In this document: positions 21,976 through 52,587 of the stretch, piece after piece
Layout: each line of letters starts with the position of its first letter
Numbering within the stretch: position 1 is the first letter of the stretch
Source of the DNA: Ostrea edulis
Lineage: Eukaryota
DNA length: 64,000 nt
NCBI RefSeq assembly: GCF_947568905.1
Contig: NC_079164.1
Span: 36,580,001-36,644,000 of the forward strand
Reading direction: 5' to 3'
Notes under the pieces: generated by a model
Database searches by the model: none
What the model saw: only the letters and a program-made list of their open reading frames with translations
What the model was told of the DNA's origin: nothing
Made by a program: the position numbers and the translations under genes

Positions 21976-22566
21976 ACAGCTCAGTGTTAAAGCGGTCGTT
22001 GCGTAACTGGGATGTTGTGAGTTCGAATTCCACTCGTGCCATGGTCGCGTCAAAATAGGTGGTGATTGCTCCTTGACAAATGCTCGGCAATCATGGGTCT
22101 TTCGGATATGACCTTAAAAATGGAGGTCCCGTGTCACGGCAAGCGTTGGCACGTTATTGAACTCTCACTGCTACGACAAGCGCCAAGTAAGGGTTAATGT
22201 ACGAGTATCGCTCCATTCCTTAAAAGTAATGGACCGAGGCCCCGAAGGGGCCGAGGTCCATTGCTTTTAAGCAATGGAGTGATACGAGTACATTGACCCA
22301 CTTAAAATCACCTTAATAAAAACTAAACTTTGTGCATTTTAATCATGTCTTACGTTTTTCATTCTTTTGTTGCATGCATCTATATCTACTTGTATAAAGG
22401 TTGACCTACTTTCCGAACACTCCATTCCTGAAAAATAATGGAGTTATCGAACAAAAGAATGACGTCATAGGTGGATTTTAAGAATAGGTATAAATTTGCG
22501 GTACTTCACCCACAGCTGGTGACGTCTCAATATGAGTGAAAAATTGTCGATGGAGCGTAAAAAATA
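21976..22566 (+). mobile_element. SINE family B copy interrupted by a ~295-bp hairpin element
   Basis: Head, central domain and tail collinear with 62128-62442 once 22188-22482 is removed. Confidence 0.8.
22188..22482 (+). mobile_element. Non-autonomous hairpin-bearing insertion (109-nt palindrome at left end)
   Basis: Symmetric fold-back 22191-22299; ctccattcct.aaaa.taatgga repeated at ~22211 and ~22420; CRE at 22460; TAAG at both ends. Confidence 0.75.
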
Positions 22567-51821: not shown

Positions 51822-52587
51822 AGAGAATCTTATACTCGTGCTTATGGCCATCGTCGGAAACCCACGGTCAGTCGCTCTACGTTCGCCTACTGTGGGTCAC
51901 AGGGCCGATATTTTCGCATAACTCATTAAAATGCATGACCTTACGTGACCTATCGAGGACCAATGGGAATCACCGTAAATATTCCCGGTACTCAAAGTGT
52001 CAGCTGTAATGGCGACGCCCATGAAAGTGTGTGTTTTGTTGAGCCACTATCAAAGATATGTTAATAAAAACTCCCAGATTTGGCACCCAAAATGGCTGAT
52101 TACTTTAACTAATACTTCACTTTCACATCCCCCCTTCGGAAATTCTGGATCCGCCTCTGGTATGTTTTTTATCATCACTGCTTCATGGCACGTGAATAAA
52201 ATCAGTCATGCATGATACAATTTAAAAATTAGATGCAAATTTGAGTTAAGATATTGTCTTACAATCCCTTTCACACGTCATTTTGTAATTAGCGTAGGTG
52301 AGACATCAACTGTGTTTGCATGATAGAGGTGTGTTTTAGATCGAAGGTCACAATTACTGGCTCAGATTGTGCCGACACCACAACTGGAACAAAAACTGGC
52401 CTTGTGACCCACGGTAGGTGAACGTAGAGCGACCGACCGTGGGTTTCCGACGATGGCTTATGGCATACGAAATTTATGAAATTCGTTACCGGATTTGAAT
52501 ATTTCCCTCGCCAATACTCGGGAAATATCAAATCCGGTAACTCTTTCATAAATTTCATATGCCATAAGTACTCGTTCAAGACCCTCT
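51822..52587 (-). mobile_element. Fold-back element with nested inverted repeats and a 112-nt palindrome
   Basis: 59-bp IR 51848-51906/52398-52456 (4 mismatches); palindrome 52457-52568; outer IR 51822-51848/52561-52587. Confidence 0.75.

What the first reader, a model, noticed from the sequence alone, without database searches (positions are those of the whole stretch)
22191..22299. Strand-specific 109-nt hairpin with two tandem G.A motifs, G.T wobbles and a GAA triloop
The fold-back is perfectly centred on GAA (22244-22246). Non-Watson-Crick positions are two CGAG/CGAG sites (tandem sheared G.A pairs), three G.T wobbles and one C.C. Sheared GA tandems and c-GAA-g loops are known to be very stable in single-stranded DNA, and the complementary strand would have T.C and A.C mismatches. 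The sequence therefore looks selected to fold on one strand only, as in folded-ssDNA substrates of tyrosine recombinases (integron attC, CTX phage) or HUH enzymes. Inference: a non-autonomous element, possibly Crypton-related, moving through a folded single-stranded intermediate.
Basis: partly seen in the sequence, partly recalled or inferred. Interest (0 to 1): 0.72.

Follow-up and report, generated by a model that had tools for sequence, protein, structure and literature searches.

The report
Oyster rolling-circle-type transposon's terminal hairpin
The 109-base hairpin is real, but it is one end of a young, roughly 300-copy, 295-base non-coding transposon that inserts without duplication right after the host letters TTAC or TTAT.

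Summary
The hairpin at 22191-22299 is confirmed. It has two CGAG/CGAG tandem G.A sites, three G.T wobbles and a C-GAA-G loop. The C.C mismatch is private to this copy.

The hairpin is not an element by itself. It is the left end of a 295-bp non-autonomous transposon (22187-22481) with about 280-305 copies at roughly 95-100% identity on all ten chromosomes.

Seven paralogous empty sites show exact insertion 3' of host TTAY. There is no target duplication and no deletion.

A 12-14-nt inverted repeat links the far terminus to the sequence just behind the hairpin, and it spans the joined-ends junction. Four exact head-to-tail junctions exist in the genome. This is the Helitron2/Helentron (HLE2, HINE-like) layout, but with an unusually long palindrome and a TTAY target instead of T|T.

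Three features point to the window + strand as the active single strand:
- TTAN lies 5' of both junctions.
- The C/T choice in the target fits G.C or G.T pairing with the element's first four bases, GTAA.
- All non-Watson-Crick features favour this strand.

About 40 or more copies lack the apex, so the apex is not essential. No partner transposase was found, and the Crypton reading is not supported.

The parts
22183..22186 (+). Host target tetranucleotide. It is CCAA in this copy and TTAY in the family. The insertion point lies directly 3' of it.
   Evidence: In 30 copies the four bases before the element are T in 24, T in 28, A in 29, and C14/T13/A3/G0. Paralogous empty sites align without gaps across this point.
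22187..22190 (+). GTAA, the first four bases of the element, directly 5' of the hairpin foot. It is the complement of TTAC and is a proposed guide for target choice (inference).
   Evidence: G, T and A are invariant in 30 copies and the last A is present in 28. The C/T choice in the target fits G.C or G.T pairing. CpG decay cannot explain the T: 13 of 30 junctions carry TG, against about 2.5% decay at internal CpGs.
22191..22299 (+). The 109-nt terminal palindrome, which is the finding itself.
   Evidence: About 142 genomic copies carry the apex and 278 carry the outer left arm.
22300..22312 (+). Internal arm of the asymmetric terminal inverted repeat. The consensus has 14 nt and reads AC, then TTAAAATCCACC; this copy lacks one C.
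   Evidence: It is the reverse complement of the last 12 nt of the element plus the first 2 nt (GT), so the repeat spans the joined-ends junction.
22313..22411 (+). Internal spacer. Different copies carry different short deletions at its start.
   Evidence: Alignment of 30 copies.
22412..22452 (+). Second, smaller hairpin, with a 13-15-bp stem in the consensus. It carries the same CTCCATT/AATGGAG words as the large hairpin. This copy has two changes in the right arm.
   Evidence: Consensus; fold.
22460..22467 (.). TGACGTCA palindrome between the second hairpin and the terminal repeat.
   Evidence: Conserved in the copies. The second family also carries it.
22470..22481 (+). Terminal arm of the inverted repeat, GGTGGATTTTAA. 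The element ends with TTAA.
   Evidence: 305 genomic matches to the 28-mer that ends here. The flanks are random beyond it.

Best explanation
The hairpin is the terminal palindrome of a young, non-autonomous transposon of the Helitron2/Helentron (HLE2, HINE-like) type. The element spans window 22187-22481.

Shown:
- The element inserts exactly 3' of host TTAY, without duplication or loss of host bases.
- Its last 12 bases plus its first 2 bases are the inverted repeat of the 14 bases directly behind the hairpin.
- Exact end-to-end junctions exist in the genome.

Inferred:
- A HUH-type Rep-helicase supplied in trans cuts one strand 3' of TTAN at both ends.
- In single-stranded form, the hairpin and the repeat pairing bring the two cut sites together at the hairpin foot.
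- The ends are joined into a circle (TTAA|GTAA), which then enters a new site 3' of TTAY.
- The target is probably read by pairing with the element's own GTAA, as IS608 reads TTAC.
- The active strand is most likely the window + strand, the one on which the hairpin carries G.T pairs, tandem G.A pairs and a C-GAA-G loop.
For: Boundaries and empty sites. Thirty copies diverge upstream of TTAY-GTAA and downstream of the final TTAA. For seven copies, the flanks with the element removed align without gaps to paralogous unfilled sites.

Copy number and age. There are 278 left-end and 305 right-end matches at two mismatches or fewer. The 80 best BLAST matches are 96-100% identical, and the 30 fetched copies lie about 5% from their consensus outside the hairpin.

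Layout. The inverted repeat sits 0-2 nt from one terminus, and its other arm abuts a terminal hairpin. This is how Helitron2 and HLE2 are defined (PMC3627910; PMC4067079; PMC11417382). The joined-ends fold extends the hairpin stem by the repeat.

Junctions. Four exact head-to-tail junctions lie on four chromosomes.

Enzymes in the genome. The genome holds 74 Helitron_like_N matches. Several open frames of 1565 to over 2000 aa carry DUF6570, Rep and PIF1, and DUF6570 is the HLE2 marker. No IS200/IS605 Y1 transposase was found.

Strand.
- TTAN precedes both junctions on the + strand only.
- The fourth target base is C14/T13/A3/G0, and CpG decay does not explain this.
- The consensus hairpin is 6.3 kcal/mol more stable on the + strand.

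Second family. An unrelated hairpin family (L035, 140 copies) has two CGAG/CGAG tandems about 30 nt apart and a C-GAA-G loop on one strand. On that same strand it is followed by AAATCCAC and TGACGTCAT, as here.
Against: - No autonomous partner with these ends was found. There is no similarity to the element in 200 kb next to 20 Rep genes, and only half of each of those loci could be read.
- On chromosomes 1 to 5, as far as those lists run, no listed exact left or right end lies within 20 kb of a Rep match.
- HLE2 elements are reported to insert between T and T. This family does not.
- The palindrome is 5 to 10 times longer than the usual HLE2 hairpin.
- There is no central tandem repeat or microsatellite, as typical HINEs have.
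- In the customary HLE2 orientation the hairpin is at the 3' end, which would make the window - strand the 'top' strand, opposite to my strand inference.
- The apex is absent from 40 or more dispersed copies.
- Private substitutions give 8 G.T-type against 3 A.C-type changes, which is not significant.
- Nearest-neighbour energies barely separate the two strands of the second family.
Confidence: 0.6

Rival explanations
1. A tyrosine recombinase (Crypton-like, or integron/CTX-like acting on folded single-stranded DNA) integrates a circular form by site-specific exchange at the TTA core.
For: There is no target duplication. TTA is present at both junctions. The joined-ends junction lies in a predicted duplex stem with a bulge, like a folded recombination site. 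Fungal Starship elements, which use a tyrosine recombinase, are reported with TTAC sites (paper listed, not read in depth).
Against: The base after TTA is C or T at the left junction in 27 of 30 copies, and A at the right junction in 28 of 30. A staggered exchange over an overlap region should mix these bases or require them to be identical. The layout of inverted repeat plus terminal hairpin is the published Helitron2 layout. No recombinase gene was linked to the element.
Confidence: 0.1
2. A single-strand 'peel and paste' element of the IS200/IS605 kind, or one moved by some other HUH enzyme that is not a Helitron-type Rep-helicase.
For: Insertion is exactly 3' of a tetranucleotide, TTAC, which is the IS608 target (papers listed, abstracts only). 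There are hairpins near both ends and a possible 4-nt guide at the hairpin foot.
Against: No Y1_Tnp match exists in the whole genome, while the controls gave matches. IS200/IS605 elements have no terminal inverted repeats, and this element does. The family is not known in animals (my knowledge).
Confidence: 0.1
3. The strand bias reflects an RNA hairpin, such as a small-RNA precursor read from the + strand, in which G.U and tandem G.A pairs are ordinary. It would then not reflect single-stranded DNA.
For: With RNA parameters the + strand folds at -89.9 against -73.3 kcal/mol. Weak, sub-threshold matches to microRNA precursor models were found.
Against: All Rfam matches lie far below the gathering scores (33 bits against 99), and they occur on both strands. 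The hairpin position is tied to the insertion junction and to the terminal repeat. No expression data were available.
Confidence: 0.08
4. The palindrome is a transposon end, but its mismatches are neutral relics inherited from one master copy. Strand polarity would then mean nothing.
For: All copies are near-identical, so they count as one observation. Six features favouring one strand has a chance of about 1 in 32. The apex is dispensable. Private changes show no significant bias.
Against: The same two-tandem-plus-GAA design recurs on one strand in an unrelated family, in the same orientation relative to shared flanking words. Both tandems sit in the YGAR context, and the control motif gave no hit.
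Confidence: 0.25

Closest known systems
Helitron2/Helentron (HLE2) non-autonomous elements: HINEs, DINE-1 of Drosophila, Cg_HINE of Crassostrea gigas
   Same: There is no target duplication. A short inverted repeat sits 0-2 nt from one terminus, and its other arm lies directly next to a terminal hairpin. A second hairpin lies near the other end. The element is small, non-coding and high in copy number. Tandem head-to-tail junctions occur. The host genome is rich in HLE2 Rep-helicases.
   Different: The target is TTAY|N, not T|T. The palindrome is 109 nt rather than about 10-30 nt and carries tandem G.A sites. There is no central satellite or microsatellite. The second hairpin does not involve the terminal repeat. 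No partner is known.
IS608 and other IS200/IS605 insertion sequences of bacteria, and their non-autonomous palindrome-associated derivatives
   Same: Insertion is exactly 3' of TTAC without duplication. There are imperfect hairpins near the ends. Action is strand-specific. Target reading may work by pairing with 4 nt at the hairpin foot (abstracts listed; otherwise my knowledge).
   Different: The host is a eukaryote. No Y1 transposase is present in the genome. Terminal inverted repeats are present. The guide would abut the cut site at the left end, so it could act only on the target, not in cis.
Canonical Helitron1, for example Helraiser
   Same: The transposition chemistry is HUH-based. The hairpin near one end acts as a terminator. 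A circular intermediate with exactly joined ends is formed. There is no target duplication.
   Different: Helitron1 has 5'-TC and CTRR-3' ends, an A|T target, a short hairpin and no terminal inverted repeats.
Folded single-stranded recombination sites (integron attC, CTX phage attP) and parvovirus telomere hairpins with mismatch 'bubbles'
   Same: Imperfect palindromes whose unpaired or mismatched bases tell one strand or arm from the other (my knowledge).
   Different: The first two use different enzymes, namely tyrosine recombinases. No sequence or layout similarity was tested here. This is an analogy only.

Membership tests
Helitron2/Helentron (HLE2) non-autonomous element | Short (8-16 nt) asymmetric terminal inverted repeats: one 0-4 nt from a terminus, the other subterminal and next to a hairpin | tested here: met
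   The last 12 nt (plus the first 2 nt) pair with the 14 nt directly behind the hairpin.
Helitron2/Helentron (HLE2) non-autonomous element | Terminal hairpin outside the subterminal repeat | tested here: met
   The 109-nt palindrome lies 4 nt from the terminus.
Helitron2/Helentron (HLE2) non-autonomous element | No target site duplication | tested here: met
   Seven filled sites align to paralogous empty sites without gaps.
Helitron2/Helentron (HLE2) non-autonomous element | Insertion between T and T | tested here: not met
   The host reads TTAY|N, and the base after the cut is random.
Helitron2/Helentron (HLE2) non-autonomous element | An autonomous Rep-helicase element that shares the termini | tested here: inconclusive
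   None was seen in 200 kb next to 20 Rep genes or near the listed ends on chromosomes 1-5. Only part of the genome could be read.
IS200/IS605 (IS608-like) | Insertion 3' of a fixed tetra- or pentanucleotide, without duplication | tested here: met
   TTAY in 27 of 30 copies.
IS200/IS605 (IS608-like) | Y1 HUH transposase (Pfam PF01797) available | tested here: not met
   No match in the genome; six of the 14 control genomes gave matches.
IS200/IS605 (IS608-like) | No terminal inverted repeats | tested here: not met
   A 12-14-nt inverted repeat is present.
Crypton / tyrosine-recombinase element | Identical short direct repeats at both junctions, from the crossover region | tested here: not met
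   The left junction has TTAC or TTAT and the right has TTAA. Only TTA is shared, and the fourth base is not mixed.
Crypton / tyrosine-recombinase element | A tyrosine recombinase gene in long copies | not tested
DDE-type MITE (Tc1/mariner, piggyBac, hAT and others) | Terminal inverted repeats at both extreme ends, plus a fixed-length target duplication | tested here: not met
   There is no duplication, and the two extreme ends are not inverted repeats of each other.
Known RNA families (Rfam 15) | A score at or above the family gathering threshold | tested here: not met
   The best match is 33 bits against a threshold of 99.

The most novel reading that the evidence does not exclude
This is a eukaryotic single-strand transposon that picks its target by DNA-DNA pairing, as bacterial IS608 does. 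Four bases (GTAA) at the foot of a folded single-stranded hairpin would read TTAC or TTAT, with wobble, in the host. The terminal repeat would present the other cut site on the far side of the same hairpin. Tandem sheared G.A pairs and a GAA loop, shared by at least two unrelated oyster families, would mark the active strand for a Helitron-type or still unknown HUH enzyme.
Probability: 0.25. Interest if true: 0.8.

Novelty: new variant of a known kind. Interest (0 to 1): 0.55.

Why it matters
How Helitron2/Helentron elements recognise their ends and targets is unknown, and nobody has shown which strand they move. This family offers a small, young substrate of about 300 copies with three useful properties:
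- a four-base target rule that its own first four bases may explain;
- a repeat that spans the joined-ends junction;
- strand-marking mismatches that recur in another family.

If the guide idea holds, target choice of a eukaryotic rolling-circle-type transposon could be reprogrammed as was done for IS608. If it fails, this is still a well-defined new oyster repeat family for annotation.

Tried and rejected
- **Whole MITE.** I tested whether the hairpin is a whole MITE. It is not, because the flanks stay conserved for about 185 nt on one side.
- **piggyBac or Tc1 reading.** A reading based on TTAA or TA duplications is rejected by the empty sites.
- **Post-insertion CpG decay.** I tested whether decay explains TTAT. 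It does not: internal CpGs are about 2.5% decayed, against 43% T at the junction.
- **Partner search.**
  - 20 loci next to Rep genes show no similarity to the element.
  - A chance 10-mer in L033 lies in coding sequence.
  - Inverted-repeat scans of Rep loci gave nothing usable.
  - The hairpin array upstream of the Rep gene in L035 lies outside that Helentron, whose shared 5' boundary starts about 35 nt further on.
- **Metagenome scan.** A scan for the apical 23-mer found seven contigs, with G+C from 38 to 67%, that share only the short hairpin. None shares any other part of the element.
- **Other searches.** Rfam and tRNA searches found nothing. The 1-kb insert in L011 is another transposon, not a tandem repeat. 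The fold-back at 51822-52587 is a different element.
- **Limits reached.** I did not try to get those letters by another route.

Full report
**Observation**

Window 22191-22299 is a near-perfect fold-back centred on GAA at 22244-22246.
- As single-stranded DNA the + strand folds at -42.9 kcal/mol (z = -14.9) and the - strand at -39.1.
- The non-Watson-Crick positions are three G.T wobbles (5/105, 20/90, 37/73), two CGAG/CGAG tandem G.A sites (13-14/96-97 and 46-47/63-64) and one C.C (28/82).
- The C.C is private to this copy. The family consensus and every other copy printed have G at position 82.
- For the consensus the two strands fold at -47.8 and -41.5 kcal/mol.

**What it belongs to**

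The genome is an 895-Mb eukaryote with ten chromosome-sized contigs.

The hairpin has at least 40 copies at 98-100% identity. Aligning 30 copies with their flanks shows two things:
- Similarity stops just upstream of the hairpin, after a TTAY-GTAA motif.
- Similarity continues for about 185 nt downstream, to a sharp end at GGTGGATTTTAA.

The unit is therefore 287-327 bp long, and 295 bp here (22187-22481).

Pattern counts over the whole genome are:
- 278 outer left arms;
- 305 right ends;
- 142 hairpin apices.

About 40 exact and some 15 near-exact copies carry the same 45-nt deletion between two TCCATT words. This deletion removes the apex and leaves a 64-nt hairpin. These copies are spread over nine chromosomes. 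Six of them, which I could size from coordinates, have the same total length of 251-252 bp. That points to a mobile subfamily, although recurrent deletion across a palindrome is not excluded.

**Insertion site**

For seven copies I removed the element from GTAA to the final TTAA and joined the flanks. The joined flanks align without gaps to paralogous copies of the host repeat elsewhere in the held DNA. The window copy is one of the seven; it sits inside a SINE-like repeat.
- The host reads, for example, GCGCTTAC|GGCC, GAGTTAC|CATACC or CCATTAT|GACG.
- There is thus no target duplication and no loss of host bases, and the element inserts exactly 3' of the tetranucleotide.
- In 30 copies that tetranucleotide is T (24), T (28), A (29), then C14/T13/A3/G0. 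The base after the element is random.
- The window copy used CCAA.

The T at the fourth position is not later CpG decay. Internal CpGs outside the hairpin show about 2.5% decay, against 43% T at the junction.

At least three copies are inserted into the TTAC that lies on the minus strand of another copy's hairpin.

**Layout**
- The 14 nt directly behind the hairpin (AC, then TTAAAATCCACC) are the reverse complement of the last 12 nt of the element plus its first 2 nt (GT). The inverted repeat therefore spans the junction that forms when the two ends are joined.
- In a fold of the joined ends, the repeat extends the hairpin stem, with an AA bulge.
- In a fold of the whole single strand, the same pairing puts the 3' end next to the hairpin foot.
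- Four exact head-to-tail junctions (TTAA|GTAA) exist on four chromosomes.
- A second hairpin with a 13-15-bp stem lies about 30 nt from the other end. It reuses the CTCCATT/AATGGAG words that also occur four times in the large hairpin.

**Comparison with known kinds**

Helitron2 elements are defined by three features (PMC3627910):
- short asymmetric terminal inverted repeats, one 0-2 bp from the 5' end and the other just upstream of a 3' hairpin;
- hairpins at both ends;
- no target duplication.

The same layout is described for Helentrons and their non-autonomous HINEs (PMC4067079), for oyster Cg_HINEs (PMC7492417) and for HLE2 in general. HLE2 includes forms with the stem-loop on the other side of the transposase gene (PMC11417382).

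The element fits this layout. It departs from it in four ways:
- The target is TTAY|N rather than T|T.
- The palindrome is much longer.
- There is no central satellite.
- No partner is known.

On the enzyme side:
- The genome has 74 Helitron_like_N matches.
- Open frames of 1565, 1740 and over 2000 aa carry DUF6570, Rep and PIF1, and two of them also carry an OTU-like domain. HLE2 enzymes are therefore available.
- A search for the IS200/IS605 Y1 transposase found nothing, while the control genomes gave matches.

**Partner**

I could not find the partner.
- The 200 kb fetched next to 20 Rep genes has no similarity to the element.
- As far as the lists of exact left and right ends run (chromosome 1 to part of chromosome 5 or 6), none lies within 20 kb of a Rep match.

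**Which strand**

Three independent features favour the window + strand as the strand that is cut and moved.
1. Only on this strand does TTAN lie 5' of both junctions (TTAY| at the left, TTAA| at the right). This is the pattern expected if one active site cuts 3' of one recognised word, as in IS608 (my knowledge of that system; abstracts listed).
2. The fourth target base is C or T, seldom A and never G. This is what pairing with the G of the element's GTAA would allow (G.C or G.T). On the other strand the same variation would need a C.A pair.
3. All six non-Watson-Crick features of the consensus hairpin favour this strand. These are three wobbles, two tandem G.A sites in the YGAR context, and a C-GAA-G loop. 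The chance of six of six on either strand is about 1 in 32.

The usual HLE2 drawing puts the hairpin at the 3' end, which would name the other strand as the top strand. That convention rests on analogy, and the transposase gene is known in both orientations.

**Second family**

A scan of the held DNA for long imperfect hairpins found an unrelated palindrome of 187-207 nt, present twice in L035.
- On one strand it has two CGAG/CGAG tandems about 30 nt apart and a C-GAA-G loop.
- Its feet also read GGGT...ACCC.
- On the G.A strand it is followed by AAATCCAC, and further on by TGACGTCAT, as in the present family.
- It has about 140 dispersed copies.
- Its ends are not defined. Fourteen conserved bases precede the hairpin in nearly all copies, so the hairpin is not terminal in the same way.
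- The array in L035 lies just outside a Helentron whose own 5' boundary is shared with L037 and L038. It therefore gives no link to a Rep gene.

The recurrence argues that the G.A tandems and the GAA loop are functional. However, nearest-neighbour energies hardly separate the strands of the second family. In addition, the apex of the present family is dispensable.

**Rivals**
- **Tyrosine recombinase on a folded site.** This is not excluded by the exact junctions alone. The unmixed fourth base and the Helitron2 layout speak against it.
- **RNA hairpin.** This would also explain G.U polarity. There is no Rfam support and no expression data were available.
- **Neutral relics.** This remains possible for the wobbles, and is less likely for the tandems.

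**Verdict**

This is a new variant of a known kind: a Helitron2/Helentron-like non-autonomous transposon with a TTAY target rule and a strand-marked long terminal palindrome. The transposase, the active strand and the guide idea are all inferences that still need testing.

Noticed in passing
L035:2650-3640 (G000 chromosome 1, about 43.40 Mb): A tandem array of an unrelated hairpin repeat of about 485 bp per unit, which I call family B. Its hairpins are 187-207 nt long and have two CGAG/CGAG tandems and a C-GAA-G loop on the minus strand. The family has about 140 genomic copies. The array lies 35 nt outside the 5' end of a Helentron.
   Followed up: partly
L035:4140-8834, L042:4044-9263, L044:3829-9999: Long open Rep-helicase frames (1565, 1740 and over 2057 aa) with DUF6570, Helitron_like_N and PIF1. 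Two of them carry an N-terminal OTU-like (Herpes_teg_N) domain. They look like intact HLE2 transposases. L035, L037 and L038 share a 5' end that starts with a small GGCCGC hairpin.
   Followed up: partly
window 22040-22186 and 22482-22565: The element sits inside a very abundant SINE-like repeat. The first look gave 3202 candidates for the upstream part, and other copies of the repeat run straight through the insertion point.
   Followed up: partly
window 51822-52587: A different fold-back element with long inverted arms and an inner hairpin (52441-52584). It shows no similarity to the family studied here.
   Followed up: no
L002:1241-1810, L015:1247-1720, and G000 chromosome 5 at about 10.809 Mb: Copies of the family are inserted into the TTAC on the minus strand of another copy's hairpin (CCATTAC|TTTT). 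This suggests self-targeting, or a composite that was itself copied.
   Followed up: partly
L011:1697-2754: A 1.06-kb unrelated insertion inside one copy of the element, with ends that resemble short inverted repeats.
   Followed up: no
G000 chromosome 3 at 73.971, 74.066 and 74.161 Mb: The same pair of a family-A hairpin arm and a family-B hairpin, 138 nt apart, recurs three times at a spacing of about 95 kb. This suggests a large tandem duplication.
   Followed up: no
If the gene runs on the minus strand, the transposon lies about 14 kb upstream of this exon.
   Followed up: partly
L051-L057 (metagenome contigs): The 23-nt apical hairpin occurs verbatim in seven unrelated metagenome contigs, four of them G+C-rich. 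The surrounding sequence is not similar, so these are independent short stable hairpins.
   Followed up: yes
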